A stretch of DNA of 64,000 nucleotides from Ascidiella aspersa (Eukaryota). Below, in pieces: positions 38,701-64,000 of this stretch. A program made the translations under genes and the position numbers. The notes under the pieces are model-generated. The model was not told the origin of the DNA, did no database searches, and saw only the letters and a list, made by a program, of their open reading frames with translations. The number at the start of each line of letters is the position of its first letter. Position 1 is the first letter of the stretch. Location of the stretch: assembly GCA_963924565.1 (NCBI GenBank), contig OZ004615.1, positions 7,440,001-7,504,000 of the forward strand, in the 5' to 3' direction.

Positions 38701-41700
38701 TATACAAATGTATTTTGTTAATTAGATAAACAAAAAACCTTCATGCCGCGCAATTTTAAATGAATCTTAAAAACGAGCAACCCTCTCCATTAATTTAACG
38801 TTTTGCACCATTTTCATTTAAAATGTTAAACTACCTAAAATCAATTTGAACTGCTGATATGCATATAATCAGAATTTTGTTCGAATAAAATCATCTGGTT
38901 TGCTGCACAAAAAACCGAAAAACATTTGTTATCCTTAAATATGTTTTACTCCGAGAAACGTTTCTAGTTTGACCTGATAAAGCACGAAGCCTTGTCAAGA
39001 TTTTAATACAATTTGTCGTTGAACAGTGTCACTTCATTTCCAAACGTATGTTAAACTCCTTCGTTTCATTCAACAGAGACCAGCGACGAGCTTCGATTCT
39101 CCGAACCTCTTTGCGACCTCGTGGCGCAAGAACTGGACAAGTCGGCTATCCTTGAGTGCGCGCTCACCGACGCCACGGCAACGGCGCAGTGGTACTACTG
39201 CGCAGCGGGCAGCGACATCGAGCGGGCGTTGCACGACGGCGACAAGTGCCAGATGAGGGCGGAAGGCTCCTGCCGATACCTGCGCATCAGCGAAGTGGCG
39301 ATGAGCGATTCCGGCATTTACACTTGCGCGGCCAAGACACAACATGGCGCCGAAATCCGCACGTCTTCTCAACTCACAGTCAAGGGTAAGACAAGAATTG
39401 TCGATAATAAGCAGCCATTTAAAGGCCATTTTTGGGAGAATATGAAGTGATTTTTAGGATAGTTAAGAACAGTGGCTGTCAAACTAAAAAAAAATGTGGA
39501 TACATGCTACATCTATACGTATTTGTTTATATTTTCCTTTTTGAAAAACTAGACTTGTTGGCAAATATAGTATTACGGCAATTTGTGTCAATACATTATT
39601 TCGTACTTTCAGCTGTGCCGAGGAAGATTCGATCGGGCTTGGAGGAGCAGAATGTTCGCGAAGGATCATCCTGCCACTTCACGGCCGTCGTGTCCCATAA
39701 GGATGTTGCAGGCACCTGGCTGAAAGACGGCAAACCAATCGAGGTAAGTGTAGCATACAACATGCATTAAGTCATCCAGCATTTTACGTTACCCTGTTTA
39801 CGACTGGCAAATGCCCTTAATTTACTAACAAATATATTAAGCAACTCAAGTGCTTATCTTTGGATTACATTTAATCGTCAGTGACTTTGTTAAATATATC
39901 AATGCTTTACTTTACAGGCAAGCTCGAAATACTCGATGGAGGCATCCGGAAATAAACGCACCCTGACCATTGCTGACTCCCGAAAGGATGACGAGGGTGT
40001 TTACGAGTTCGTGTTCAACGGTTCGTCGACTAAAGCCAACCTCAATGTTCAAGGTATATGTCAACCAATAAGTTATAGCAGGGGTTCTTGAACTTTTTTA
40101 CCACGGCCCCTATTTATTTTTTGCTTCGCGTGGACCACAGTAGGCAAAAAAAATTATAAAAAGGACGGCCTAAATTGATGTCACAATACAATAGACTTCA
40201 TAAATCTGTGGATTTCCGTCCAAAAAATGTGAAAGTGAAATGTAGTCTAAATACAGTCAGTGCAAAACCGTTATATTTTTAATTAAACTGTTTTCTTTAA
40301 AAAATTGAAAACTCCCAAGGGGTCCACGGATCCTAGTTTAAGAACCTCTGAGCTATAGAAAAGTGTAATGCTTAGAAAAAAACATAAGATTTTTTAGAGG
40401 TGCATTCATCATTTGCAACAAAATTCTACTGCGAAAAACAACTTTTCCAATAGTATATAATTTTCTTAATATCCAGGCATGCAAATCACCATCACAAAGC
40501 CTCTGAAGGATCAGGTGATATTCGCTGGTGACGTGGCCACGTTCGAAGCTAAGGTATCACGTGACGGCGCCGCTGGCGTTTGGACGCACAATGACGTGCA
40601 GGTCACGAGGTCGGAAAGGTAAGCGGTGAAGTCATATGACGTAACGATCGTGTGACGTCAAAACTAATACCAATTTATTCTAAACGATTGCAAAATACTC
40701 TAAAACGATTTCAAAACACTCTGATATTTCGCATTTTTTTTAATTATTTTGCCTAGGGTCCCTACAATAGGTAGCTCAGGTAAATCAAGATACACGAGCC
40801 ATAGCGCTTGTTTATTCAATGGCTAATAAACACATATGTATGATTTTATGACCAACTGAACGAGTAAAATAGGAAGATATCTCCTCAACCTTACACGTAA
40901 CTGACGACAATGGCTTCAAATTGGAGCGAATATTCTCTGGACTTTCCTGTCTTAGTCAAAGTCAGTCATTAATCAGTTCTAGTCATTAACAGGGAAATAT
41001 ATTTCGCCACAAAATATGGCATCATCAGTCTCTTAATTCAAATGAATCAATTAATCGTTTAATGCGTTTTAAGGCATTTCTATTTGAAATTTAAGTCATT
41101 TCTTTTTTAATTTTTATATTTTTTTATCTTTTTGTTCCAGGATTATCGCTACCTCGGAGCATAACAGGCACCTCCTGATTATCGAGAGCGTCCGAAAGCA
41201 AGACTCCGGCACCTACACCTTCTCGGTCGGCGACAAGAGCTCTTCGGCCACTCTTCAAGTCAAAGGTACATCATGACTTTAAAGATGTCGCAGTTCGGTC
41301 CTTTAGAGAGTTGACAATTTAGATCGTGTAGACAAAATCGTAAAGAGGATGTGCGAAGTTGCACGCAAGTTACGTTAAGTTCTCTGCATTAAAGATTATT
41401 TTCTTTAAAAATACTTGTATGTACATTTATTTTATTCGGAATGACTTACAAGCTCAACATTTTACCACTGTCAAAAAACTGAGCTAAAATCTAGTTGCAA
41501 GCTTACAAATAAAATATTTTTTTATTGCTATGTTTTAATCTCGTTACAGGCGCATTTTGCGCTCAGTAATAGCCAATGTGATAGCCAAGTTTTTTTTTAA
41601 TTTGGTTTACTCTAACGCAGTAATCATTTTAACAATACGGATGCGCATTAGCACGGCTTAACCATCGGTTTGATTTCGCAGAAGTGACGATCACGGAAGG

Positions 41701-44700
41701 ACTCAAGAACGGAAGCGTCCTCGAGTCAAGCGATGCCGCCCTCCAGTGTCAGGTCATCCACGTCGATTACGTCAGCGGTCAGTGGAAGCGCGACGGGGTG
41801 GCGCTAAAGAGCGGCGACGCCAAGAAGTATTCGGTCGAGGTGGACGGCAAAACACAACGATTAGTCGTGCGTGGCGCCACCCTTGAAGACGCCGGACGCT
41901 ACAGCTACGTCACCGGCAGTGATGACGTCACTGAGGCGGAGTTGAGCGTCATGCCAGTCGAGATCGTGCAGCCCCTGGTCGACGTTTGCGAGGCTGAGAC
42001 TGCTGCCGTAAAGCTGACTGTTGCGCTCTCGCAAGCTGGAGTCAATGGAGTTTGGATGAAAGACGGACAGCCGATCAAGGTTTGTGATTTTCACTGAAAG
42101 CGAATTATTGTACTTACATTTTATTTTAACTTTGTTAAGTTTATCACGTATTTGTCTTTGTTCTCTGATTCCACTGTATGAGATATATGCACCTGACCAT
42201 CTTCTGAACGAGAAGTACTTTTTGGCACAATTCTAGCTTTCAAAATACCCCGAGTTATTTAAACTACGATTTTTCTCATTTTTTATTGTAAATAAATATA
42301 AACAGCCGAATTGCATTAGAAAAAGGATAGCAAAGAATTTTGAGACAAAACAAAGCGCCTTTAAGCAAAGAGACCGCAAAGGGTTAAAACACATAATAAT
42401 TTCTTTTTTTCACTCCAATAGAGAGTTTATTTATTGTTCAAACAACATTTTTTGTATGACATTTTGACATATGTGATGCAATATTTTTAAACGAAAACAA
42501 GTATTAAACCAGAAATATATAAGTTGATGTCAAACTACTCACAAATAATCTGAAATTTGCCAAATCCCCAATCTGCAATATACAAATGCGTTTCAGATGT
42601 CGACAAACTGCGACGCCACTGTGGACGGACAAACACACACCTTGTTCATTCGATCGCTATCCGTCGAAAACCAGGGCGTTTACGAATTCAAGGCCGGAAG
42701 CAATTCAACGAGTTGCAAGCTTTCCGTGCAAGGTACAGAACTGTGGCCTGTAAATATAATAGTGATTTTGTTTAAACCTGTTGGCTTGTCATAATTATGG
42801 TCGATGACGTTTTTGTATTTACTCAAAACACGGCAAATTAAAACGCAGTAAATCAAAGCAACTGTAGGAAGTCTTTTAGAAGAAATTTCACAATCGTGTA
42901 TTAAGTTACGCTTTGAAAGGACGGTTTTGCTTCTCTTACACAACCATTAAGAATTTAAAGATAATTATTAACCATTGCGCCGGAGCCTGGAACTTCTTAT
43001 TTCCATTTTTTTCTCCTCCAAGCGCTGTTGTTAGTGAATAGCAAAATTTGATTTAACGCCCGTCCTTTCGCCTAGCTTTTAAATACTCACCAAATAAACA
43101 GTCATGACTTAAAACACAGACAATCAAGTGACTTAAACATTTCACTTACAGGAGCTGAAATCACGCGGCCTCTGGTCGACCAGTCTGTTCTAGAAACTTC
43201 CAAGGTCACCCTCGAATGCGAGGTGGCCCAGGACGGGGTGCAGGGACGCTGGTTGCGCAACGGCAAGGAAATCGACCCGGCCTACACGCAGAAGTACGAG
43301 AGCTCGTGCCAGGGCCGACGCCACCGGCTCACTATCACAGGGGTCGGCAAGCAGGAGTCGGGAACCTACACTTTTCAGTTTGGCCGGGCTTCCACGTCGG
43401 CTACACTTCAGGTTGAAGGTAAGGCGATGGGTGCTTGTTTAAACGTGAACGTTTTTTTAAACGTGAAACTAAATGTAGAGTTTTTTTCGCAGTTGTGAGG
43501 AGTGTAACCCACTTAAAACAATTGAATTTACTATGAAATACGTTGTACAAATATTCGCTAGAACGGCCACAAACCAGAGAGTTGTGTGCAGTATTTTTGA
43601 ATGATACTATCTTAACAATGCAATTCAAATAGGATATAGAAATATCGCAAAACATAGGCTCGATAACTCCTTGAGGAAAGAAATTAGAAAAAAAAATCTA
43701 TTTTTAAACCAATAGTGTTTTTATCAGTTTAAATTTTGTCATTTTGCCTTGTTTCAGTGCTGGTAACTTTTATTTTTGTCATCCAAACTCTTGGCTAGAG
43801 CCTTATTCACGCGTATTAAACGTTCAAACCGGGACAAATTACTATCACAAACAAGCAACTAGTCATTTTAAAACAAAGAAACAACTATATTCACTCCTCA
43901 CAGCCACCAAGTTCGCCAAGGGACTGCGCAACATCACGGTCAACGACGGCTCCGACGCCCAGTTCAACGTCGAGATCGCCGACGAGCGAGTACGTGACGT
44001 CATATGGCAACGCAACGGCGTCACGCTGCGCGCCGACGGCGCCAAGTACAAGATGACGTCAGACGGCACACGTCACACGCTTGAAGTGCTGGCCATCGCG
44101 CAGAATGACGAGGCTGTGTACAGTTGCATCGCCGGTTCGGCCAAGACCAGCGCCCGACTTTACATTGATGGTAAGCGGCGAGACGCGCTTGACCAATGAT
44201 TGCTGAGTCGTGCTGGGCACTTTTTTGCGATTTCGAGACGGCCTTTGCACGTTGTCGCTTGTATTTTAATTCAAGTTTTTAGTTGAAAACAAGTTTTCAA
44301 GCAAAACACTATAGAAGATGAGATTTTTCGCAAAATTTTCTTCGAAGGTCGTCTTTTTTTTGTCGGACATCATCAGGCGTGATAGCATTGCAAAAACGCA
44401 ATAGCTAAAAATAAATATATTTTCAATAAATAATTCAATACATTGAATTTCTCTTGGGCCTTGTCACTCCCTGCTTACTTTACAATCCAAAATGAATTAA
44501 GAAAGCTAGCCACACCAATCAAACATGGGGTATTGGGGTAAGAACTAATTTTTCGAGTTCCCGCTATTCATTTTTAATGCGCCGAAAATGCGAGAAAATA
44601 AATATTCGATAGGATTCCGCGTATCCGCTCAATAGGCGTCCTTTTAAACTTTTAGAAAGAAGTCAAGCTGTATATTCAGGAAGACCCTTGAAGTCAAACG

Positions 44701-47700
44701 TTTTCTCTTAAAAATCATATTTTATTAAAAATCACTTGCTTTACTTGCAGTCGTGCCAATAGATGTGCTGGCCTGGTATATTGCGCGACGTAACAAAATT
44801 ATCCAACCCAAACTGCGCCTGTGACTCTCATAACTTGTCACCGCAGCTCGTAATCAAGGCAATGTTGTTGTCGTCGTCACTCATAATTGTTCGGCCATTC
44901 CGCCCGATCTGTAACCCCTACGAGTGCCATTGTTCATTTCGCACGAGTATGGGCCGTAGTCATAGCTGACAATAACAGGCCACTCGACATTGGGCGCGAA
45001 ATATCGATTAAAACTATAGTTTTTCCGGAACTTGTCATTAAACAATAGCTTAACTTTGAATTCCTAACATAAAGCGTTTACCGATGACGTTTCCATGACA
45101 GTACTTCATGTGACTTCCCGTTCGTGCATTATAGTTTCTGTTTTACGTAATAAGAATATCAAAGCCCATACAGAAGTAGGTATAATTTTGAACGTTTCAA
45201 ATAACTCTTTATTCACTTCTGCATGGGCTTTGATATTCTTATTACGTCTTACTACAACCTCCAACCCTTATGCTCGAAAGTTTTTGTTATGTTTTTAATA
45301 AATGCTTGTTTTTATTGTACCCCTTCATCATCGCTTTCGTATTGCCGCGTATTTTTTTCAACGCCAATTTTTCGCGGCCGTAATAAAATATCACAAGCAA
45401 AAAAACAAGTGCGAAATTGTGCCTTTGTGCCGCATTTAATGCCGTGTTTTCTGATGTCTCTCAGCCGTCGAGATCACGCGTAAGCTGACCGAGGTGCGAG
45501 CGATGGAACGTCGGACCATCGAACTCACCGCCGAGGTCAAGAACAAGGACGTCAGGGGCCAGTGGCTCAAGGACGGCAAACCGCTGAAGCAGAACGAGCG
45601 AATTGAGGTGTGTGAAATAAAGTTAGGATGCCTTAAAGGGGAACATAAATGAGTAAACAGTTTTGGGGGCCAAAGCCTGACTTGCTTAAACATTATTACC
45701 AGTTTTGTGAGGAATTAATAATAAATAATGTTATCGTAAAGAATTAATATTAAATAGAAGAGCTAGAACATTTAAAAGGTTTGTTAAACGGTATAATGTT
45801 TAAATCAATAGTTGTTTAGCTGTTGCCTTTTTACAAGTTGCTGAAAATTCACGCAAGAACATTAGAATGCCTAAGCCTGCAAATAAAGTATATGAATTAT
45901 TAACTAAAGTTTAATTATACTAACAAAATTAGGTATTACAAAAGAAAACTAAACTTGGATCACATCATGTTGCCTATCGGCGCCCTAAGTTGAGGAACAC
46001 GGTATTCATATAGAAATCCTCTACACAAGCAAAACTCAAAACTCTAATTCCCAGATCATCCAGCAAGGACGAGTTCACAAACTCGTTCTGAGCAACTCGC
46101 GAGCCAGCGACACCGGTACGTACGAGTTCAGGGTCGGTCGTTCCGCAACGTCGACCACCGTCAAGGTCGAAGAGGTGCACGTGACGAAACGCATGAGTGA
46201 CGCCGTCGTCAAGGAGACGCAAACGGCGACATTCGAATGCGTGGTATCGCACGACGATGTGCCCTCTTCGCTGTGCAGCTGGTACAAGAACGGCAAGCCG
46301 ATACAGGTGTGTTTTGCCGCCAGATGGCGTACGAGAATCATATTTTCATGAGCGTAATCCATTTATGTCAAGCGTCGAGTGGGCTTGATTAGAACTTCTA
46401 AATTCTAAACAAAAATCGGAACAACTAAATTCGTATATTGGAACAACTTATTTCGAACAAAAATCGTCTTAATACAGCGTTTATCACCTTCAATTTGGGT
46501 AATAAATGTTCTTTTATTTATAAATTGGAGTCTTGGCATATCACACTTAAAGTCAAGGCGGTTACACTTAAATTAAAAAAAAATGGACGAGCGAAGGGTT
46601 ATTGTAACAAAAACACTAAATCAAATTTGTAGGTATGTATAATCCTAAGCTGAATAGGACTGTCGCCCGCTGGTATAAACACCTGTCCAAAACCAGCCTT
46701 AACAAATAGTTCTATACGGTAAATGTTTTGTACGAAACTTCCATGGTAATTTACTTTACGGAAAGGTACACATTCCTAAACGCATTTGAAAAAATAGCAA
46801 AATTCCACAAATCTCCAACAAAATAAAAGTTTAGACATAACCCCAGTTTTGGTTACAGACTGGTGACAACGTGACACAGACGGTGGACGGACGTGTTTAC
46901 CGCCTCACCGTGAGGTCGTGTTCCGCCGAGGATGCAGCAAAGTACACCTTCGAGGCTGGCCAGGACAAATGCACAGCTGATCTTAACGTTGTCGGTATGG
47001 AAAAGTTTTACCTTTTGTTCGATATTGTTTATCGCGATTCTAGCTGATAACGCAGATTATGGCGAATTTTTTTAAGATTGAAAATAGTTTGCCCCTAAAA
47101 TGCGATTTTTTTGGTTACCACAAAAGAATCACATACAGGCATAGATTCTAAAATTATAAATCTAAATACTATTTTCCCAAACATCGAAACAAATTTATTT
47201 TCGGAGAATCGTTGTTTTCACCATTCGGATTTAGGCAGATTCTGTTATTGGAAAGAAAATTCTGATTATCCTGATTACTATTTACCATCTAATTTTGTCT
47301 CACGATATTGGGTTGTAGTAACTCATATATGTTTACATTCCAAAATGAAAACGTTGTGGAATAGATCTTATATTCCATTAAAAATTAAAACATTGTGGGA
47401 CAAATTACTTTTTTTTTCTGTTTGCTTAAATAACGGAGCCAATGTTTCGTACGCACAGTGTCAGTAAAATGCCGTACGTGAAAAAGCACCAGAGCCCCAA
47501 TAATGTAGCACAAAAACAACAATAAATAAATAATGATAAAAAACATCAAAAAATAAAAACATCCTTGTTTGCAGCCGTGGTGATCGTCAAGCAGCTGCCC
47601 AAGACCTACAAAGCGGTCTCGTCACAAGCGGTTATGCTCGAGTGCTCGCTCGACTCATCCGACATCGGCGCCTACTGGCTCAAGGACGGAAAGCGAATCG

Positions 47701-56700: not shown

Positions 56701-59700
56701 TGTGTGTATTTGACTATCCATTCGTCTCGATATAGTCAATGAAGTTGTTGTAATATACCTTTGCCTCCAACTGGGTAATAATCAACGTGTACACGAGTCT
56801 CCAGTTTTTACTATTTACCACAAACGAGTAAAAAACTAACAAAGAAAAAAAACAAGCACGTTTGCCGTTTGTCTGCTTGCAAACGCATGCATGAGGTTTG
56901 ACCTCGCAACAGGATTGAATTGCTTGGATTTAACGCACGTCGCCGCTTCGGTTTGCAAAGCATCCTTACAGCAAGGTACGTGGCATGTGTACTGGTCTGA
57001 TAGCATGTGTTTTAACACGCATTACGATATCAGTATAGTATCATAATTAGTGTAAATTTGTCATATGTCATACATGTACATTTAAATAAGCTCACTCGCT
57101 AACCACGATTCCATTCTTTCCCCGCGCAGAAAAATCAAAACTGGACGAAACCGGCAAACAGTATTTGAGCCACGTTGAAATGCAGCTGTACAGCAATCCC
57201 AGCAGCTACGAGCTGAGTTTACCAATCGACGACGTCACAACCGAGTTTTCGCCCATGATAGCCGAGCCTCTGCGGGCCTTGGCGGCCATGGTGGGCCAGG
57301 AGGCGCGGTTCCAGGTGCGCCTGGCCGCCCTGCCGGCGCCCGAGATCGTCTGGTACAAGGACGGCAAGCCGCTGAAGGGTCTTGGACCGGGTTTGGACGG
57401 GCCCAAGTACCGATTCTACTTTCAGACTCGCGCGCACAGTCACACGCGCGGCGTCCTAATCGCGCCAGTGGCGCCCGAGGACGCCGGGGTGTACGAGGTG
57501 CGCGCCTGGAACAGACTTGGAACCGTGACTTGCAGCGCCGTGCTGTCTGTCAAAGGTAATTTGACAAAGAGGCCGGCCGTTAGTGCTGCTGCTGCTGCTG
57601 TTGGTTTGACTGTGGCGAATGGGACTCGACGATTGGGTTAACAAAAAACTGCTCCGATGCCAAATTAATTATTCGATTTTTATTAACCTAAAGGTGTAAA
57701 TCGAGTTGTGTCGATATTTTTGTAAATTAAACACCCTATTGCCTCAGTTGTAATTTGCCCTCGATTCAATCCAATTAGAAAGAAAATGATAAATAATAAT
57801 CGTCTGTTCATAATGGTACGATTGCTTCGCCTCTGTAAATGCTGTAATCTAAATAAATACTTTACGCACGCTGACGTTTGTTTTTCTTCCCCCATCATCC
57901 TCCCCTCTCCTCGTCACTTCGCTGTTCTCATCATCACAAACACACAATCTTATATATTATATTTATCCACATCCATGCCATGCTTTCTCCACGTCCCCCC
58001 AACTGATTGTTTCTCGGCACGCCTGTGTCCGTAACTGATGTGTGCGCCCGCTATTGCTTTCGATCCAATAAATCGATGCGCGCACAAAAAACGACCTGGT
58101 AAATTTTAACATCAAAAAAATAAATAAACGACAGACGTAGCGGCCAGCCAAACGCAGAGCACGGAAAGCGACAGCGACGGTAGCGCCCAGCGACGCGAAA
58201 TTGCGCGGCTCGAGCACGAAGTTGCGCCCGCGGCGCGCCACATCAGTCACGTGACAACGCGCCTCGCCAAACCCACCCCAACCCCGTCAGAAAAGTCATC
58301 AGATCACGTAGGTCCTCTCCGTGGGGAGGAGGACGCGACTTCTCCTCCGAAAGAGGCGATCCGCGGACTCTCGATTCGGTTTGTTCCCGAAGTGAAGCCG
58401 AGCGTGCAGAAGCAAGCAGGACAACAGCCTCGAACGGAATCGACCGTGGCCTTAAAGAAGCGGGTCTCGTTTTCGGCCGATCACGATTACGTTCTTATCT
58501 CGCCCGCATCCACTCCCCTGACGCCGTACAGCGACGAGGACGAAGACACGTTCACCGAAACGTCGGAGGACGAGTTTCAGTTCGAGCCGCCGATGGCCAC
58601 CAGCGAGTTCTACGTGGACCGTGGCCGCGACCTCGAGTGGGAAGCGAGAAGCGGTCAGGAGAGTCCGTCCTCGCACACCAGAGGACTCAGCATGCTACAG
58701 ATGCAGGTGAAGGGAGTCGAGAGGCAGATGCCGACCGTCGACGTCTTAGTGAAATGCAAAGGGGCTGAAGCGACAGAATCAGCAGTACCCCCATCACCGG
58801 ACGTTGGATTACAACGGAGTTACTCGCGTCAGATGAAGGTAGATTTGTCGAGGCCCGAAAGCCCGCGCTCGCCGAAGCCCAAAGTCCAAACCGTTACAAG
58901 CAAGACAAGCCAGACCCTTTCAAAACTAAAGGAAGTGACCCCGGGCGATAAAAGGCAAACCTCTCGCGCCGAGATAAGTGTCGACGAGAGAAGGGAATTT
59001 CCTGACTTTACGGCGGTCGTGGCGAAACCAAAGGCAGCGGTCTCCCCTCAGGTCGACAGCAGATCTCCCGAGCGTAGAGCGAAGCAAACCGCAGAGGCGG
59101 GAACCTTGGCTTACGCGCGGACGGCTAACGGTCAAGTACAGACAGAGGCTAGGAGGTCCAGCGGATCCTCACAGACCTCTTCCACCACCGAGAGCAAAGA
59201 AAGCTCCACGGACGAAGGGGTTGTGGCCAGAACCCAGACCCCGACCTTGCGTACTAAAGCCGCCGACTCGCAGACGCAATTTCAGGCGTACGGCGCCACG
59301 CAGACGCGGTATAGGCGTGCCGGCGACCAAGAGAAATTAGTGCCAGTACCGGAAATACGTGGATTCGACGCCGCGACTGTAACAGAGCCGGAGCAAGCGA
59401 CAAAACGCTCACACACTGAAATAAACACCGGAGCGCAAAAAGTCGTCGCTGTATCTAAGCCTATGCAGCGTACTTCCGCGCCCAAATCGCCAGTCCAGAG
59501 GTCGACCATTGCAGGAACCCAGACGGTATCAGGAATCGAAACCGCGTCGGGAGGAAGCCAGACCTTTCCTCAAACCAGGTCCAGCACAAGTCAGGCTCGC
59601 CTGGAAACGAGAACCACAGAGACATCTGTGGAAACCAGAGATTCTTCCGTCCGGACGCAAACCCCGGAGAGAAGAACCTCCGCGTCCGAAACTCAGACAC

Positions 59701-62700
59701 AGTTCAAGTCCTACCAAGGCACGCAGACCGAGAAACGCCGCTCATCCGGCGAGAAGACAATGCAAACGGACTTTTCCTCCACAAAGATTTCGCAGACGGA
59801 GCGCGAGTCGCAAAGAGCCCCGCCGAAAATGCACGTAGCCACTGTGAAGCCCATACAGATGGAACGACCCAAGTCGGTCAAGGGAAAGGAAACGTCCTTC
59901 ATCGCCACGACCGAGACGCAGACCTTCACACAGAAAAGGTCCGGTTCTGTGCAAACCACGCCGCGAATAAGCACAAGGACAACCTCGACGGAATCGATCG
60001 GTTCTTCAAACGAAACCCAAACTCCGAGCCGGTCTTCCTCGGTGATGGAGACTCAAACCCACGAGATGAGCTACAGAGAAACGCAGACCGACCATCGTCC
60101 AGGCACAGACGCAAAAATGCTTCAGACCGATTTTTCCTCAACCGCCGAATCTCAAACGATCTATCAGCGCCCGTCTGGGATGGCATCCGAAACTCAGACC
60201 GCCTCTGTGCAAAGCAAAGGCATTGGAACAGATCAAAAGGCGACCAAACAGCGTCAAATTCATGTGGCAACCGTGGTAACGCGTACCATAGACGACAGCG
60301 CCCAGACCGAGAGTAGACTTGACTCACACAGCGTACAGACCGGCTCGGATGTAAGTTCGGTTGAGTCGCAAGCCAACGTAGGCCGACGAAGCTTCTCGAC
60401 TCAAGCGGCGCCGCGTTCGGCGACCAGCGAGACTTCAACCGAAATGCGAAGCGTTACGACTCGAACCCAAACCGCCAAGAAAACCACCGGCGCCGTAGAA
60501 ACCCAGACGCAAGCAAAGAGGTACGGTTCATCGCAAACTGATGCCGCGCCGTCGCGAGATACAGAAGCGGTGCAAACTGATTTCGCGGCCACCAAGACTT
60601 CGCAAACTGCGACATCCAAGTCTGTGGGCCGCGATTCGGAGACGCAAACCAAGCAGCTCCGGTCGAAAAGCTCCTGGACCGAAGAAGATGCGTCTCCGGT
60701 TGCGGCGCCGATGCGCGAAGAAGTATTTGCTGAGCCCGAAGCGGCACCGGAAAAGATCATGAGCCACACGGCCAATGTTGTAGCCGTTCCTGTTCACAAC
60801 ATCGCCAGTAGTAAAAATCTGGATCCGGTTTCAGTGGTTTTGCCTATTTTGGATGAAACCACGAGCGACGGACGACGGACCCGGAAACCGACCGTTCACC
60901 TTTCCCACGCCAAAGCAGTGGCGGTTAAAGAGGAAACGAGATTTGAAAAGGCCGTACAGAGCCCGCCGCTCGCGAGAAAGCGTGTCGGAAAACCTACAGA
61001 CAAATCGAAATCGACAAAGACAAAGCCGACAACGGTGGTGTCAGAAACTGAAACCGACTCCAGGATTGCTCCAGCTCCACGCATACGACAAGAGCCTACT
61101 ACAGAGCAACAGTTGGCACCCACTGCGGAAATCGCTCAGGCGATGCGACAGGGTATCAAAACCATCAGCGATGAGCAGACTCCGACACAAAGAGTTGCGC
61201 AGATTCAGGTGACCCAAGTTACCAAGAAGACCTCGACAAGGAAGGACGGTGGCGCCGTGCACTCTGTTTCGGAGACGATCGCCTCCCAGCAAGTGTGGAA
61301 CCCGATTACTCGAGAATTCCAGGAGGTCTCCATGGAGCAGAGCCAGGTGTCCGGTCCTGGAAAGGTTCAAATCAAAGCCTCGTCTGAAGAGGAACCGGTC
61401 AAAGAAAAGCCTTCGAAACGAGGTGATGTGATTGTGCACCCGATCCAGTCTGTCGGTGACGCAGTTCAACCTACACAAGTAAAGAAAACAGAGGAAACGG
61501 AAGAAGACGTGATTCGACCCACGGTGCAACCTGGTGTTTCACCGAAACTAAAAGTTAAACAAACAATGGCGGAAAAAGCGAGGTCGTTGCGGTCTCTAAC
61601 AGACCAAATGGCAAAAGACCAAACGCAAACATCCAAGCGGGAGATTCTTAAACCCAAGGACACGGTTTCGGAACCCCCTATTCAACCCACTTCAAAAGAT
61701 CGGGATACCTTGAAAGATGTTGATATTACTTTGGATAATCTTTCCGATGCTATTGTAGAGGTTGCTAAACCTACACCGGTCGTTGCCACACCAGTCGCTC
61801 AACCTATCGCACCTAAACCGATAGAAACGCAACCGAAAATCGAGGTTACTGAACAAAAGGGTGATGTACTCGAAGAGAAAGGCGCTGAACCAGCGAAACC
61901 CGTTACAAAGCCATTGGAAAAGAGTGAAACAAAGAAAACTAAACGTGTTTGGAACTCGCGCACACGCCAGTTTGACGAGGTGGAAATCGAAATCTCCGTT
62001 ACTCAAAAACAAGAAAATATTAAATCTGCTAAAGCGAGTCCAAAGACCACACAGGTAACCTCAGAAGAAAGTGTTACTAAATTAGCCTCAAAGCAAGTGA
62101 CCGAGACTGAAACGGTACCGAAAGTGGAACCACAGGTTGATTCACTGTCACTTAAAACACACGAACAATCCGAGGTGGTTGTTGAACAGAGGATTGGAAT
62201 GACAAAACGATCTCCGACCGCCAAGGAAATGACGACAGCCCTGGCTTCTCTAACCGACAATATGTCGAGAGACGAAAAAGAAGTGCCACCAAAACGTACT
62301 CCCGTTATTCCCGGGGCAGAAAAGGTTACCGAAGAAGCTGTGCAGCCTAAAGACAGACGAGAGGCCAGTGTCGATGTTGAGGTTGATGACCTGCCTCCGA
62401 AAGAGGTATCCCTCGATCAAAAGCAAACTACTAGAAAGGTGTCTGCGCAAACATCAACCACCGTGACCACTCAGGAAATTAAAACGACCAAACGTGTTTG
62501 GAATCCAAAGACCCGGCAATTCGACGAGGTTGCAATCGAAAAGTCGACCAAAACAACTTCGGACACCAAACAGAAACCAAAGAGTGTCACAGAGATTAAG
62601 GAAATCAAATCTGACGAATCACGTTTACAGGAATTACACGACGCTACAGCCTTAACGCAAACTGTAGACGAAGTTAGTGTGGAGACATCGTTCACTGACA

Positions 62701-64000
62701 CTCCGTCTCAACCTAAAGAGTTGGAGAAGTCAAAATCGCAAATCGATATTAAGCATTCAACGCCAGAAGTAAAACTAGAACCGGAAACAAAGCATAATAT
62801 TCACGTTGAAACGTCTAAACCGGTCAGTGTTTCAACTAAATCTGAAACAGAAACGGTGCCATCTGCTGAACCGAAACAAAAATCTGACGAAGAGAAGCCA
62901 CGAATGACGTGGAATTCTAAAACGCGGCAATTCGAGGAGGTACTTTCCGTTGTTAAAGTTCCAACGTCGAAGGCCACCGCTCAGGAACCTGCCAAAGTAG
63001 ACATTCCAACGGTCGAGGAACCAAAACCAGCCGTGACCAAGCCGCATGCTGAACCAGAGACTGCATTCCAGAAGGTTCCGGTTGCGACCGAACCGCAAAC
63101 TGCTTTAACCGGGGACGAATATGTTCAGCCCGTGTTTCGGGATGTTAAAACCGGGAAGGTAGACAAACAGGACGTGGAAAAAATACCGATTAAGACGTCG
63201 GGCAAGTCTAAAGAATTAACACTGTTTTTAACTGACGCGTTAGTGGTTGATCAACCACAACAGGGAAAAGTTAAACAATCTGAACCCTCCCAAGCTCTTA
63301 AAGTTGCCGAAGAGCCGATTTATAAAAAGGATAGGGAGACGGTTGCAACTAGCATTGATGCACCTACTTCACCAGAGCAAACAATTCCAGCCGCTGTTTC
63401 CAAAAGCGTTAAAATTGGGGAAGTTGCAACTATTGAAGTAAAAGAAACTCATGAAAGGATATCTGGTGATGCTTTATCGCAAGAAGAAAAGAAAACCAAG
63501 AGGGTTTGGAATCCTAAAACGCGACGCTTCGATGAAGTTATAGTTGAAATCTCAACAACAACAAAAACTCAAGATTCTAAACCGAAAAAGACAGCAAAGC
63601 CTTCCCCAGCGAAAACCGAAGAAATAGCTCCAGAAACAACCAAAGCACCAAAAACTGATATTCAAGTAAAAGTGACCGAAATGCCAGAAACTGATACAAG
63701 TGTTCAGACTGAATTGGTATCGTCAACAAAACCTGGTGACGAGGAGATTATACATCCTATTACTTTGGGTGTAAAACCTACGAAAACAAAGGCCATTTAT
63801 AAAACATCCGCTGTGGAATCACTTACCGATGCAATGTCTATAAAGGGCATTCAACCGGAACCAGTTTCATTGCCAAGCGGTGTTGCTGTTACAGAAGATT
63901 TAGTTCAGCCAAAAGATAAAGATTCTGTTGATATTTCTGTCCCATATGAACCTACACCACCCGAGGAAATCCCGGTCGGTAAGTCCCGCGAAGACATTAA
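14090..64000 (+). CDS. TTN: Titin/connectin, N-terminal part (Z-disk to proximal I-band); 52 coding exons in the window; gene continues beyond it
   Basis: The spliced translation starts MSRQNNLMADPAVEPPRFLQSLQGVVAVEGGQACFEAIITGFPRPEVRW (Z1-like). It follows human titin domain by domain, including non-Ig landmarks: RQSPSPIRS, IPPW, SPSRRLDD..EKFFKPKF, AWYTATAVNK.GRD.TRCKVNVE, DLYD..KMQKP, EFG, EDMRSVL, IRKTKDDLAHWSK and I1 WFYPEDKVCEM.IRD. All junction phases are consistent. Confidence 0.96.
14841..14898 (+). other. tRNA-derived fragment (3' half only; tRNA pseudogene or SINE head)
   Basis: Perfect T-arm GTGAG-TTCGAAC-CTCAC (B-box) at 14861-14877 followed by a T run. No D-arm or acceptor stem was found. 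Confidence 0.4.
15590..16462 (+). CDS. TTN: Titin Ig Z2 (exons 15590-15714, 16300-16462)
   Basis: PPDFTLRLANVEASQGDLVRFQVRASGVPTPRVKWYRE|GAEIRNCADFQIRCEEGLYSLTIAEACEEDTGRFTVTASNQGGKATSTAVLTVSG; very close to human Z2. Confidence 0.93.
16045..16128. repeat. Short imperfect tandem repeat, about 3 copies of TTTCGACGTGTGTTGCAATTTCAGC
   Basis: Read directly from the sequence. Confidence 0.75.
17033..20534 (+). CDS. TTN: Titin Z-disk unique insertion (exons 17033-17187, 17747-17878, 18192-18341, 18876-19403, 20424-20534)
   Basis: In-frame exons with canonical splice sites. They include RRQSPSPIRSVRMSPP and IPPW, matching the vertebrate SP-rich Z insertion. The last small exon is the least certain. 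Confidence 0.8.
17232..17536. mobile_element. hAT/Charlie-like MITE
   Basis: CAGTAGTTCCCAAC...GGTTGAGAAACACTG with internal GGCACCC motifs; TSD degenerate. Confidence 0.55.
18388..18448. repeat. Tandem repeat, 3 copies of ~21 bp (TATATTGGTCACGCTTGATTG)
   Basis: Read directly from the sequence. Confidence 0.85.
20246..20285 (-). ncRNA. Minimal type I hammerhead ribozyme motif (intact core, weakened stem I)
   Basis: Minus strand reads ACA-CUGAUGA-U-GGCA-UGAGGUAU-UGCC-GAAA-CG-UU/UAU. Confidence 0.5.
21094..23607 (+). CDS. TTN: Titin Ig Z3, linker and Ig Z4 (exons 21094-21223, 21704-21858, 22234-22331, 22591-22991, 23494-23607)
   Basis: Z3: LQCEVMGNPVPSVTWFRDG...DFEMTYNGRVSCLLIRE...DAGEFTCSATNAQG. 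Z4: KLVEGGSVQLDCVISGIPPPRVTWAKNG...LVITMVFVEDVGEYTITATN. Confidence 0.9.
23181..23224 (+). ncRNA. Minimal hammerhead-like motif, G8A variant (probably impaired)
   Basis: UGCC-CUGAUAA-A-GAU..CCU.GUAU.AGG..AUC-GAAA-CG-UC/GGUA. A similar motif lies at 30817-30860. Confidence 0.45.
23959..25136 (+). CDS. TTN: Titin SP/SPxR-rich linker (exons 23959-24085, 24951-25136; the intron between them is GC-AG)
   Basis: ...ISRSPVRVASPSRRLDDLDQLDIEKFFK corresponds to human ...SPGRRLEETDESQLERLYK. The donor is CCAG|GCAAGT at 24085. Confidence 0.82.
24453..24867 (+). mobile_element. Diverged copy of the same hAT MITE family
   Basis: GTGTTGTAA...AAGTCCCAGTCCAAGTCA...ATTACAACACTG. A further fragment lies near 18075-18150. 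Confidence 0.7.
25390..36178 (+). CDS. TTN: Titin Ig Z6-Z9 equivalents (exons 25390-25502, 31048-31212, 31826-31994, 32480-32717, 33286-33435, 33791-33902, 34478-34632, 35076-35266, 35913-36178)
   Basis: Segments PKFLKKP..CNEGQATRIDCKVTGRP; HRVVVKEDGIRSLIISPA; PDIVWLKD; AHFECHIVPIGDP..VEWLLDGKPLEYANR; IVLQPDPIRVQEGDPARFRCRV; SKRFRVWCDGIHY. All recognisably match the human Z-disk Ig series. Confidence 0.92.
25645..25931. repeat. Diverged direct duplication, ~100-bp unit with ~187-bp period
   Basis: ATAGGCATTT...GTATCCCAAACAAACG.TACA.CCCCTGCCAC..TACTACACCTG occurs twice. Confidence 0.7.
28047..28345. repeat. Diverged tandem duplication, ~154-bp period
   Basis: TCTGGCCTATGT..AG..GTA.GTTAAACGGT.GGTAAAAT.GTAAAAC...AAAT(T)GCATTTAT occurs twice. 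Confidence 0.7.
29710..30447 (+). CDS. Hypothetical 245-aa ORF nested in the largest titin intron (nested gene or alternative first exon)
   Basis: The frame is open from 29560 to 30447 with ATG at 29710 (MEEILNTTKGEQQLPCWRLEPEY...). Codon usage is exon-like and GC3-rich inside an otherwise AT-rich intron. No domain was recognised. Confidence 0.45.
   Translation: MEEILNTTKGEQQLPCWRLEPEYIVNSLPLPSKYDEPVAVSTDSDSGYRRSFSSDDRPFTEPETPSTTHSAEMNSAELIKRAADQLASLSPALIRDRLTQQPVLKTSLGIGMSIESSTAEPKLTRPPKIKEAALRYTGINSLKDLRSYMSRKRALKSDATVQPLPATADAKLSPPISKSLKNGGGVEKSRFGRVAEVGVSPWLKADLHIYVCVCSKGKFPSSVCLRSTCERHCYRRVPARSVFLR
34243..34391. mobile_element. Palindromic Penelope-like remnant carrying a hammerhead motif
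   Basis: Imperfect inverted arms of about 65 bp. Combined consensus TTAA-CTGATGA-T-GATRC-AAGCTC-GYATC-GAAACGTC-TTAA. A related copy lies at about 50-135. Confidence 0.6.
36654..38553 (+). CDS. TTN: Titin Z/I junction linker and Ig I1 (exons 36654-36817, 37353-37505, 38163-38348, 38436-38553)
   Basis: Linker EELQSKF and YEVFIRKTKDDLAHWSK, then EAPIVLERLYNQTANEGEDARFRVRF..WFYPE|DKVCEMYIRD...NIAGQAGSQGFLLVQ (I1-like). The donor at 37505 is weak. Confidence 0.88.
39077..50213 (+). CDS. TTN: Proximal I-band tandem Ig segment, 11 domains (exons 39077-39385, 39613-39743, 39918-40053, 40477-40618, 41141-41265, 41682-42079, 42597-42732, 43152-43418, 43904-44170, 45465-45607, 46055-46306, 46859-46994, 47575-47850, 48349-48496, 50089-50213)
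   Basis: Repeated ~90-aa Ig units with W-x-K-D/N-G, H-x-L and D-x-G-x-Y-x-F-x-x-G motifs; splice phases consistent. Confidence 0.9.
40079..40350. mobile_element. hAT/Charlie-like MITE
   Basis: CAGGGGTTCTTGAACT...AGTTTAAGAACCTCTG; TSD AGTTATAG/AGCTATAG (7 of 8). Confidence 0.75.
40994..41032 (-). ncRNA. Minimal type I hammerhead ribozyme motif with an intact core
   Basis: Minus strand reads GAGA-CUGAUGA-U-GCCA-UAUUUUG-UGGC-GAAA-UA-UA/UUUC: 4-bp stem I, 4-bp stem II, palindromic AUAU stem III. Confidence 0.6.
50872..53948 (+). CDS. TTN: Two Ig domains equivalent to the last constitutive proximal I-band Igs of vertebrate titin (exons 50872-51012, 52391-52534, 52835-52960, 53760-53948)
   Basis: PEAPKFVQEL..GRPTPKITWYRE..FKYKLLHDEDQYTL; EGQSARFQCKIAGT..RIKPSRYFK..QLEVTEAYPEDEGEY. 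These closely resemble the human domains preceding the novex/N2B exons. Confidence 0.9.
53359..53680. mobile_element. hAT/Charlie-like MITE
   Basis: CAGTGCTTCCAAACC...GGTTGGGAAGCACTG with subterminal GGGTCGC; TSD CTTTAAAA/CTTTAAAC (7 of 8). Confidence 0.78.
55327..57555 (+). CDS. TTN: Two further Ig domains, probably alternatively spliced (exons 55327-55475 with 55992-56127; and 57130-57555)
   Basis: EPPRVIEPLQPAHVIEGSAVKLEC..DSGEIRCHASNFAG; SPMIAEPLRALAAMVGQEARFQV..WYKDG..EDAGVYEVRAWNRLG. Both units are phase 1 to phase 1. Confidence 0.8.
58135..63978 (+). CDS. TTN: Giant titin exon (~1948 codons): unique region with an xQT array, then a PEVK-like T/E/K/P/V-rich region
   Basis: Phase-1 acceptor at 58134. 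The frame with codons starting at 58137 has no stop to the window end (it is absent from the ORF track, which lists only closed ORFs). A phase-1 donor G|GTAAGT at 63978 is a candidate end, but the exon may run further. Confidence 0.8.

What the first reader, a model, noticed from the sequence alone, without database searches (positions are those of the whole stretch)
61287..63550. Five copies of an unrecognised WNPxTRxFxEV motif punctuating the PEVK-like region
Seen, all in frame: QQVWNPITREFQEVSME (W at 61296), KRVWNSRTRQFDEVEIE (61950), KRVWNPKTRQFDEVAIE (62499), RMTWNSKTRQFEEVLSV (62910) and KRVWNPKTRRFDEVIVE (63507). They are separated by 137-218 aa of non-repetitive T/E/K/P/V-rich linker. 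Conserved aromatic residues in aromatic-poor disordered sequence suggest a binding module. The pattern (strand, NPxT turn, strand) fits a small beta-hairpin (inference). It is not a vertebrate PPAK repeat that I recognise.
Basis: partly seen in the sequence, partly recalled or inferred. Interest (0 to 1): 0.75.

Follow-up and report, generated by a model that had tools for sequence, protein, structure and literature searches.

The report
Conserved mini-hairpin motif array in tunicate titin
A 20-residue tryptophan-phenylalanine motif is repeated many times along a huge floppy segment of a sea-squirt-type titin muscle protein, has been kept almost unchanged in related species while everything around it drifted, and looks like a tiny self-folding hairpin that probably serves as a row of docking beads whose partner is unknown.

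Summary
The five copies are real and lie exactly where stated. They are the first 5 of 17 copies in one 12.7-kb titin exon, window 58135 to 6.9 kb past the window end.

Titin identity rests on two results. One N-terminal exon matches the solved Z1 domain. The upstream exons are collinear with residues 98-3498 of a vertebrate titin.

The motif is not a product of recent duplication. Synonymous sites have diverged as much in the motif as in the linkers, but amino-acid change is about four times lower (dN/dS 0.08 against 0.37).

A profile search of 1.84 billion proteins found 9 other proteins with the motif, carrying 1-22 copies each. Two are Ciona intestinalis models. No vertebrate titin matched.

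Across 82 copies the conserved block spans exactly positions -6 to +13. W and N are invariant.

The block shares W-N-P-x-T-x-K-aromatic with the 12-residue NMR hairpin PDB 2EVQ. A beta-hairpin is therefore likely. A binding role is inferred only.

Pfam, the PDB sequences and the searched papers do not describe the motif. An adjacent-window note in this scan (s1-791015) had flagged it.

The parts
58135..64000 (+). Window part of one giant titin exon. It runs on to 70866 in window numbering, 6.9 kb past the window end. It is about 4244 codons long, disordered except for a terminal Ig domain.
   Evidence: The open frame is 58128-71021, 4297 aa. An AG acceptor ends at 58134. A GTGAGT donor starts at L003 6867, which is 70867. 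By my reading of these two sites the exon is phase 1 at both ends. Pfam finds only a terminal I-set Ig.
61278..61337 (+). Motif copy 1 (20-residue block, W at 61296). It is the most degenerate of the five: ...QQVWNPITREFQEV...
   Evidence: 59.5 bits
61932..61991 (+). Motif copy 2 (W at 61950): KKTKRVWNSRTRQFDEVEIE
   Evidence: 64.7 bits
62481..62540 (+). Motif copy 3 (W at 62499): KTTKRVWNPKTRQFDEVAIE
   Evidence: 64.8 bits
62892..62951 (+). Motif copy 4 (W at 62910): EKPRMTWNSKTRQFEEVLSV
   Evidence: 53.1 bits
63489..63548 (+). Motif copy 5 (W at 63507): KKTKRVWNPKTRRFDEVIVE
   Evidence: 69.7 bits
61593..61610 (+). SLTDxM block of unit 1. Further copies start at 62247 and 63819. It is a second block of the ~200-aa unit, seen only in this genome.
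   Evidence: 9 copies in this genome's frame, 0 in the 7 other proteins examined
62346..62357 (+). PKD[RK] block of unit 2. A further copy starts at 63909. It is a third block of the unit and is not kept as a repeat in other species.
   Evidence: 9 copies in this genome, 1 in P0018, 2 in P0037, 0 in the other 5 proteins
57252..57557 (+). I-set Ig domain exon directly upstream of the giant exon
   Evidence: Pfam I-set E 6.6e-15; tblastn match

Best explanation
SHOWN.
- The motif is a 20-residue module. The consensus over 82 copies is K-K-T-K-[RQ]-V-W-N-P-K-[TS]-R-[KQ]-F-D-E-V-V-[VI]-E.
- It is repeated 17 times, 5 of them in the window, along one giant and otherwise disordered exon of a tunicate-type titin.
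- That exon follows the N-terminal Ig exons, which are collinear with vertebrate titin up to residue 3498. By recalled titin layout this is about where vertebrate titin has its novex/N2B exons.
- The module is under much stronger purifying selection than its linkers.
- It is the only part of the array kept across species.
- In this genome it occurs nowhere outside this exon.

INFERRED, structure. Each module folds into a small amphipathic beta-hairpin, either alone or on binding. A basic strand (K-K-T-K-R-V-W) pairs with an acidic strand (F-D-E-V-V-V-E) across a six-residue N-P-K-T-R-K loop. The invariant Trp and the Phe clamp the loop as a cross-strand pair, as in the designed hairpin 2EVQ and the GB1 hairpin.

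INFERRED, function. The hairpins are multivalent docking beads displayed on the titin spring. They would bind a repeated sarcomeric surface or a dedicated partner. Thin filament, titin's own Ig domains and a LIM-type adaptor are candidates only. Binding would tether or tune the spring.
For: Copies and exon.

Titin identity:
- The exon at 14066 matches solved titin Z1 chains 2a38 and 1ya5 at residues 4-31.
- tblastn with a marsupial titin (P0012) is collinear from window 14542 to 53962, matching residues 98 to 3498.

Selection:
- W, N, F and E are invariant in 17 of 17 copies, while Pro uses 4 codons, Arg 6 and Thr 4.
- In the six most similar units, pS is 0.44 in the motif and 0.47 in the rest, but pN is 0.055 against 0.228. 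dN/dS is 0.08 against 0.37.
- In the window's five units, synonymous sites are saturated (pS 0.88 and 0.72), while pN is 0.30 against 0.58.

Other species:
- The profile of the 17 copies gave 32 proteins at E<=0.001 among 1.84 billion representatives.
- Nine of them carry the motif, with 22, 9, 12, 7, 5, 5, 2, 1 and 3 copies.
- Two are Ciona intestinalis models and one comes from a marine metatranscriptome.
- Six giant frames share an HISHV start block. A shared terminal Ig domain was aligned for five of them and for P0040, which lacks the start block.
- That Ig domain is only 30-40% identical between this genome and the others. In contrast W and N are 82 of 82 and F is 80 of 82.
- Information content exceeds 1.1 bits only at positions -6 to +13.

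Exclusivity: the profile finds 17 matches in the 308.6-Mb genome, all in this frame.

Hairpin:
- The 2EVQ and GB1 hairpin sequences are printed as beta-hairpins in PMC11013605 and PMC9885153 (passages).
- The motif shares W, N, P, T, K and E with 2EVQ and has Phe where 2EVQ has its second Trp.
- The conserved block is 7 + 6 + 7 residues, symmetric about that loop.
- Mean net charges are +2.8 for strand 1 and -2.4 for strand 2. V/I/T/F/Y/W make up 39% and 47% of the strands against 29% background.
- Cross-hits are strand-turn pieces of WD40, FG-GAP and Bsp-like repeats.

Transcription: sense-strand RNA reads lie over the motif region.
Against:
- The Atlas's own model of the Ciona fragment P0039 is low-confidence overall (mean pLDDT 0.38, pTM 0.18). 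Nothing shows a confidently folded element, and per-residue values were not given.
- Loop position +5 is Arg or Lys in 75 of 82 copies, where 2EVQ has Gly. The GB1 loop has Lys there.
- Charge complementarity fits an alternative strand register about as well, so the register is not settled.
- No partner is known or testable here.
- Copy number (1-22) and spacing (46-765 aa) vary widely between species. This argues against a fixed molecular ruler.
- RNA support is thin: 24 reads, no splice joints, about 6% of one run read.
- Five of the orthologous frames come from unnamed ENA assemblies. Their species and the age of the motif are therefore unknown.
- Pairs of repeat units in the dN/dS sums are not independent.
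Confidence: 0.5

Rival explanations
1. Self-association stickers. The hairpins have no outside partner. They pair with each other within one titin or between neighbouring titins, through their hydrophobic face or edge strands. These reversible cross-links would shorten the spring and open under load.
For: - The motif occurs in no other locus of the genome. This suits a self-contained system as well as a dedicated partner.
- The strands are amphipathic and charge-complementary.
- P0018 alternates two motif subtypes at 100 and 169 aa spacing, as expected if two hairpins worked as a pair.
- The same exon carries a separate QT-motif array that another agent read as a possible chain-pairing device (unchecked).
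Against: - There is no evidence of pairing.
- The modules make up only about 8% of the array's residues by my calculation (17 x 20 of about 4200).
- Invariance of W, N and F fits a ligand hot spot equally well.
- The count falls to 3 recognisable copies in P0052, which is few for a zipper.
Confidence: 0.2
2. Extended linear docking motif. The block binds a known kind of peptide-binding domain without forming a hairpin. Examples are the F-D-E-[VI] part acting as an Atg8/LC3-interacting F-x-x-V core, or the basic-Trp part acting as a Ca-sensor (S100 or calmodulin type) site.
For: - F at +7 with V, I or L at +10 is present in most copies, and acidic residues lie between them.
- The rules for these motif classes are recalled, not tested.
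Against: - These short cores would not explain invariant W-N-P six to seven residues upstream, nor conservation of 20 contiguous positions.
- Residues before the Phe are basic, and Pro at +2 disfavours a helix.
- A general-purpose motif would be expected in other proteins of the genome, yet none was found.
Confidence: 0.12
3. Neutral repeat debris. The similarity only reflects recent tandem duplication or gene conversion of a ~200-aa unit, with no function for the motif.
For: Units 6-11 are tandem, 205-207 aa long and 65-84% identical to unit 7, apart from unit 11 at 49%. Copy number differs between species.
Against: - Synonymous divergence in the motif equals that in the linkers, but non-synonymous change is about four times lower.
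- Many synonymous codons are used.
- The motif is kept in 9 other proteins whose linkers are unalignable and whose neighbouring Ig domain is 30-40% identical.
Confidence: 0.03
4. Remnant or cryptic WD40/beta-propeller repeats.
For: The profile cross-hits WD40 proteins through K-T-[VK]-R-[IV]-W-N-x-x-T.
Against: - Pfam WD40 does not match the frame at E<=0.1.
- Only about 12 of the 39 WD40 profile positions are mimicked.
- Copies are 97-276 aa apart in low-complexity sequence.
Confidence: 0.02

Closest known systems
Designed 12-residue beta-hairpin PDB 2EVQ and the GB1 41-56 hairpin (sequences as printed in PMC9885153 Table 2 and PMC11013605)
   Same: An aromatic residue sits on each side of a six-residue loop. 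W-N-P-x-T-x-K-aromatic-x-E matches 2EVQ at 6 of 12 positions. Thr at loop position 4 and a basic residue at position 5 match the GB1 loop. The strands are rich in beta-branched residues.
   Different: - This is a natural motif with longer strands of 7 residues.
- It has Phe instead of the second Trp and Arg instead of Gly.
- Its strands carry opposite net charge.
- It is embedded 17-22 times in a giant disordered protein.
- Its fold has not been shown.
Vertebrate titin spring elements: PEVK (PPAK and poly-E repeats), N2B unique sequence, novex-3 exon
   Same: The motif array lies in a disordered segment of titin directly after the N-terminal Ig exons. It is repeated, low in aromatic residues (2.3%), and lineage-specific in sequence.
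   Different: - There is no sequence similarity. Nine vertebrate titin isoforms or fragments of 3244-5645 aa have 0 motif copies.
- P+E+V+K is 43%.
- The motif is a 20-residue island in linkers of 100-270 aa inside a single exon. By recollection, PEVK consists of back-to-back ~28-residue repeats encoded by many small exons.
WD40 repeat, last strand and following turn
   Same: The local pattern K-T-x-R-[VI]-W-[ND]-x-x-T is shared. The profile hits WD40 proteins through it.
   Different: There is no full repeat, no Pfam match and no propeller spacing.
Multivalent short-motif arrays in disordered proteins (for example the QT/LC8-type array proposed upstream in the same exon, note s1-792888)
   Same: Many copies of one short conserved motif are separated by fast-evolving spacers.
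   Different: This motif is longer (20 residues), probably self-structured, and found in one gene only.

Membership tests
Titin/connectin gene | N-terminal Z1-type Ig domain | tested here: met
   The exon at 14066-14235 matches titin chains 6fwx (E 9.5e-15) and Z1Z2 chains 2a38 and 1ya5 at residues 4-31.
Titin/connectin gene | Exons collinear with vertebrate titin's N-terminal part | tested here: met
   24 tblastn segments run from window 14542 to 53962 and match residues 98 to 3498 of P0012 in nearly unbroken order. One local inversion lies at 41690-46309.
Titin/connectin gene | A-band super-repeats and C-terminal kinase | not tested
   These lie far outside the window. Only 30 kb downstream was fetched.
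Vertebrate PEVK segment | Composition dominated by P, E, V and K (about 70% or more, recalled) | tested here: not met
   43% in the finding's region and 42% over the whole array.
Vertebrate PEVK segment | PPAK-type repeats of about 28 residues | tested here: not met
   No Pfam family other than Ig at E<=0.1 or 0.01 over the frame. I did not check that this Pfam copy holds a PPAK model.
WD40 repeat | Match to the 39-position WD40 model, in tandem copies about 40 aa apart | tested here: not met
   No WD40 hit. Copies are 97-276 aa apart.
Autonomous beta-hairpin of the 2EVQ/GB1 type | Aromatic pair flanking a six-residue N-P-x-T-x-K or D-D-A-T-K-T type loop | tested here: met
   W at 0 in 82 of 82 copies. 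F or Y at +7 in 81 of 82. N at +1 in 82, P at +2 in 73, T or S at +4 in 78.
Autonomous beta-hairpin of the 2EVQ/GB1 type | Folded hairpin structure | not testable with these tools
The PDB sequence library omits chains under 20 residues.

The most novel reading that the evidence does not exclude
Tunicate titin carries a natural array of the smallest known kind of self-folding unit. These are Trp/Phe-clamped 20-residue hairpins, strung on a 4000-residue disordered spring. They would act as a force-sensitive zipper, pairing with each other or with the thin filament and releasing stepwise under stretch. This would be a tunicate-specific way of setting muscle stiffness, in place of the vertebrate N2B/PEVK system.
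Probability: 0.15. Interest if true: 0.8.

Novelty: new variant of a known kind. Interest (0 to 1): 0.6.

Why it matters
Titin's disordered springs are known to carry lineage-specific repeats, but very few of those repeats have a defined structure or partner. Here a short module is better conserved than the neighbouring folded Ig domain. It is restricted to one exon of one gene, and it closely resembles a peptide known to fold as a hairpin by itself. That makes it a rare, directly testable handle on how a non-vertebrate chordate titin spring is organised. A 20-mer peptide is enough for CD or NMR, for pull-downs from Ciona muscle, and for mutational tests. It also shows that two Ciona gene models, one named 'proteoglycan 4-like' and one 'uncharacterized', are fragments of titin.

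Tried and rejected
- **Word search with the 17-unit alignment (candidates of about 114-362 aa):** no hit.
- **Word search with the window's 909 aa (candidates of about 500-1590 aa):** no hit, although P0039 (830 aa) and P0040 (901 aa) are in that size range and carry the motif. These blanks reflect the word filter, not absence.
- **Long-query word search:** 36 hits. 34 matched only the terminal Ig domain and have no motif.
- **PDB sequence search with the motif profile at E<=10:** nothing. Chains under 20 residues are not in that library, so 2EVQ could not appear.
- **Atlas:** no usable look-alike for the Ciona fragment.
- **Paper searches:**
  - Four motif strings gave one unrelated plant kinase paper.
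  - 'Ciona' with 'PEVK' gave two papers, seen as listing only.
  - PMC12198301 (passages only) cites Hanashima et al. 2012 on Ciona connectin. That paper is not held, so I cannot exclude that it mentions the repeat. Supplements were not opened.
- **SLTDxM and PKD[RK] as cross-species motifs:** rejected. They are confined to this genome.
- **Charge pairing as a way to fix the hairpin register:** inconclusive, because two registers fit.
- **Rejected from recall only:** WH2/thymosin-type K-K-T actin motif, WW-domain second hairpin (Pfam gave no WW hit), SUMO-interaction motif, N-glycosylation sequon.
Full report
**Observation.** A pattern scan of all six frames finds W-N-x-x-T-R-x-F-x-E-V exactly five times. 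All five are in one + strand frame, with W at 61296, 61950, 62499, 62910 and 63507. From the frame's residue frequencies (W 0.4%, N 0.8%, F 1.5%) I calculate about 6e-8 chance matches. The window has no N.

**Anatomy.**
- The frame is open from 58128 and leaves the window. With the adjoining genome (window = G000:C9:7440001-7504000; L003-L005) it is 4297 codons long and ends at 71021.
- An AG acceptor ends at 58134. A GTGAGT donor begins at 70867. The exon is therefore 58135-70866, phase 1 at both ends by my reading.
- Pfam finds nothing in it except a terminal I-set Ig domain. The exon just upstream is also an I-set Ig.
- The exon holds 17 motif copies at W-to-W spacings of 97-276 aa. Seventeen of its 20 Trp residues are motif Trp.
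- Copies 6-11 head tandem units of 205-207 aa. The window's five copies head older, diverged units.
- Each unit of this genome also has an SLTDxM block and a PKD[RK] block. The linkers are therefore not 'non-repetitive'.

**Gene identity.**
- The exon at 14066 matches solved titin chains, including Z1Z2 structures 2a38 and 1ya5 at residues 4-31.
- tblastn with a 5645-aa marsupial titin isoform (P0012) lays 24 segments from window 14542 to 53962 on residues 98 to 3498 in almost perfect order.
- The giant exon follows directly. By recalled titin layout, that is roughly where vertebrate titin has its novex and N2B exons.
- It has no detectable similarity to the vertebrate sequence there. Only its Ig domain matched, and to a generic Ig.
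- Other agents' notes call this genome an ascidian. My own support is that the only named relatives of the exon are from Ciona intestinalis.

**Selection.**
- Within the 17 copies, W, N, F and the E at +9 are invariant. Meanwhile Pro uses four codons, Thr four and Arg six.
- In the six most similar units, summed pairwise synonymous difference is the same in the 20-codon motif (pS 0.44) and in the rest (0.47). Non-synonymous difference is 0.055 against 0.228, giving dN/dS of 0.08 against 0.37.
- For the five window units, synonymous sites are saturated (0.88 and 0.72) and pN is 0.30 against 0.58.
- Pairs are not independent, so these are descriptive ratios and not tests. Even so, they exclude 'recent DNA duplicates with equally similar flanks'.

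**Other species.**
- Two word searches found nothing.
- The long-query search gave 36 proteins. Of these, 34 match only the Ig domain and have no motif copy, with a best profile stretch of 2.7 bits or less against 42-66 bits for true copies. Those 34 include nine vertebrate titin isoforms or fragments.
- The other two, P0018 and P0028, carry 22 and 9 copies.
- A profile of the 17 copies searched against 1.84 billion representatives gave 32 proteins at E<=0.001. Nine of them carry the motif:

| Protein | Copies | Source or name |
|---|---|---|
| P0018 | 22 | ENA, unnamed |
| P0028 | 9 | ENA, unnamed |
| P0037 | 12 | ENA, unnamed |
| P0038 | 7 | ENA, unnamed |
| P0039 | 5 | XP_026691853.1, 'proteoglycan 4-like', Ciona intestinalis |
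| P0040 | 5 | JGI, unnamed |
| P0045 | 2 | marine metatranscriptome record |
| P0050 | 1 | XP_078489335.1, 'uncharacterized', Ciona intestinalis; followed by two I-set Ig domains |
| P0052 | 3 | ENA, unnamed |

- Of the other 23 proteins, I scanned six with Pfam. Four are WD40 proteins, one is FG-GAP and one is a GBS Bsp-like repeat protein. P0046 has a different repeat. The remaining 16 were not scanned.
- Six giant frames (this genome, P0018, P0028, P0037, P0038, P0052) begin with the same HISHV block. A terminal Ig domain of one type was aligned for the five of them other than... none excluded: all six plus P0040, which lacks the start block. They are the orthologous exon.
- That Ig domain is 30-40% identical between this genome and the others.
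- The linkers align only in low-scoring patches.
- The SLTDxM block is absent elsewhere. The PKD[RK] block appears elsewhere only as three isolated matches.
- In contrast, over 82 copies W and N are 82 of 82, F 80, P 73, T/S at +4 78, R/K at +5 75, D/E at +8 75 and E/D at +9 72.
- Relative entropy exceeds 1.1 bits at every position from -6 to +13. It is at most 0.91 bits at every position outside, from -30 to +40.
- In this genome the profile finds 17 matches, all in this frame.

**Structure (inferred).**
- The conserved block has 7 residues, then a six-residue stretch N-P-K-T-R-K, then 7 residues. W and F sit directly on either side of that stretch.
- An adjacent-window note (s1-791015) mentioned designed hairpins. 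Following it, I found in two papers' text the 12-residue peptide of PDB 2EVQ, described as a beta-hairpin with an NMR structure, and the GB1 hairpin (passages only).
- The motif shares W, N, P, T, K and E with 2EVQ in register and has F where 2EVQ has its second W. It shares T, a basic residue and the flanking F with the GB1 loop.
- The first strand has mean net charge +2.8 and the second -2.4. Both are enriched in V, I, T and aromatic residues.
- The profile's cross-hits align the first half to WD40's K-T-V-R-I-W-N-x-x-T-G, which by textbook knowledge is the last strand and turn. The second half aligns to N-P-K-T-G-T-F-D-V-V-V-S-E-V-S of Bsp-like repeats and to T-G-Q-F-Q-E-V of FG-GAP repeats.
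- Against this: no prediction could be run. The Atlas model of the Ciona fragment is low-confidence overall. Most copies have Arg where 2EVQ has Gly. Charge pairing does not settle the register.

**Function (inferred).** A 20-residue module held this tightly and found only in this exon is most simply a recognition element shown many times on a flexible chain. I rank the readings in this order:
1. docking on a sarcomeric partner;
2. hairpin-hairpin self-association;
3. a non-hairpin linear motif.

The wide variation of copy number and spacing between species argues for avidity and against a ruler.

**Expression.** One RNA run with the same species label, about 6% of it read, laid 24 reads. All are in the orientation expected for + strand RNA in the usual stranded libraries. 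Mean depth is 0.2-1.8 in 11 of the 25 bins that lie within the exon, including 61300-61499, 61900-62299 and 62500-63099. There are no joints. The DNA run X1 holds the whole stretch and may be this assembly's source. One motif-bearing protein comes from a metatranscriptome. Expression is therefore likely but thinly documented.

**Novelty.** I found no description of the motif in Pfam, in the PDB sequences, or in the searched papers. The one paper on Ciona connectin that might mention it is not held. It is a new type of repeat module in a known protein, titin's disordered spring, and is so far seen only in tunicate-type sequences.

Noticed in passing
window about 58230-58270 (aa 35-48 of the giant frame): A block [QR]-H-I-S-H-V-x-T-R-L at the start of the giant exon is conserved in 6 of 6 orthologous frames. 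It is a second cross-species motif of unknown role.
   Followed up: partly
window 61593-61610, 62247-62264, 63819-63836; 62346-62357, 63909-63920: SLTDxM and PKD[RK] blocks recur once per ~200-aa unit in this genome. They are not kept in the other species' frames.
   Followed up: yes
window 57700-58099: The intron just upstream of the giant exon has more RNA reads (mean depth 2.9-3.8) than the exon itself (1.8 or less) in run X4. This could be a retained intron, an unrecognised exon or an internal start.
   Followed up: no
P0039 and P0050 (Ciona intestinalis XP_026691853.1 and XP_078489335.1): Public Ciona models named 'proteoglycan 4-like' and 'uncharacterized protein' carry the motif, and P0050 also has two I-set Ig domains. 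They look like fragments of the titin giant exon.
   Followed up: partly
window 59130-60650: A T-Q-T/Q-T rich repeat region lies upstream in the same exon. The Ciona fragment P0039 has a similar region. It is the subject of another finding (s1-792888).
   Followed up: no
P0046 (4240 aa, NCBI, unnamed): An unrelated protein has 14 copies of L-L-W-N-S-A-T-G-R-F-S-C-G-T-D. It is a chance partial look-alike of the motif.
   Followed up: no
P0018 aa 974-3620: In this orthologue two motif subtypes (…KRVWNPKTRKFDEVVMEF… and …KQVWNPKSRKFDEVVVES…) alternate at spacings of about 100 and 169 aa. This makes a two-motif super-repeat.
   Followed up: partly
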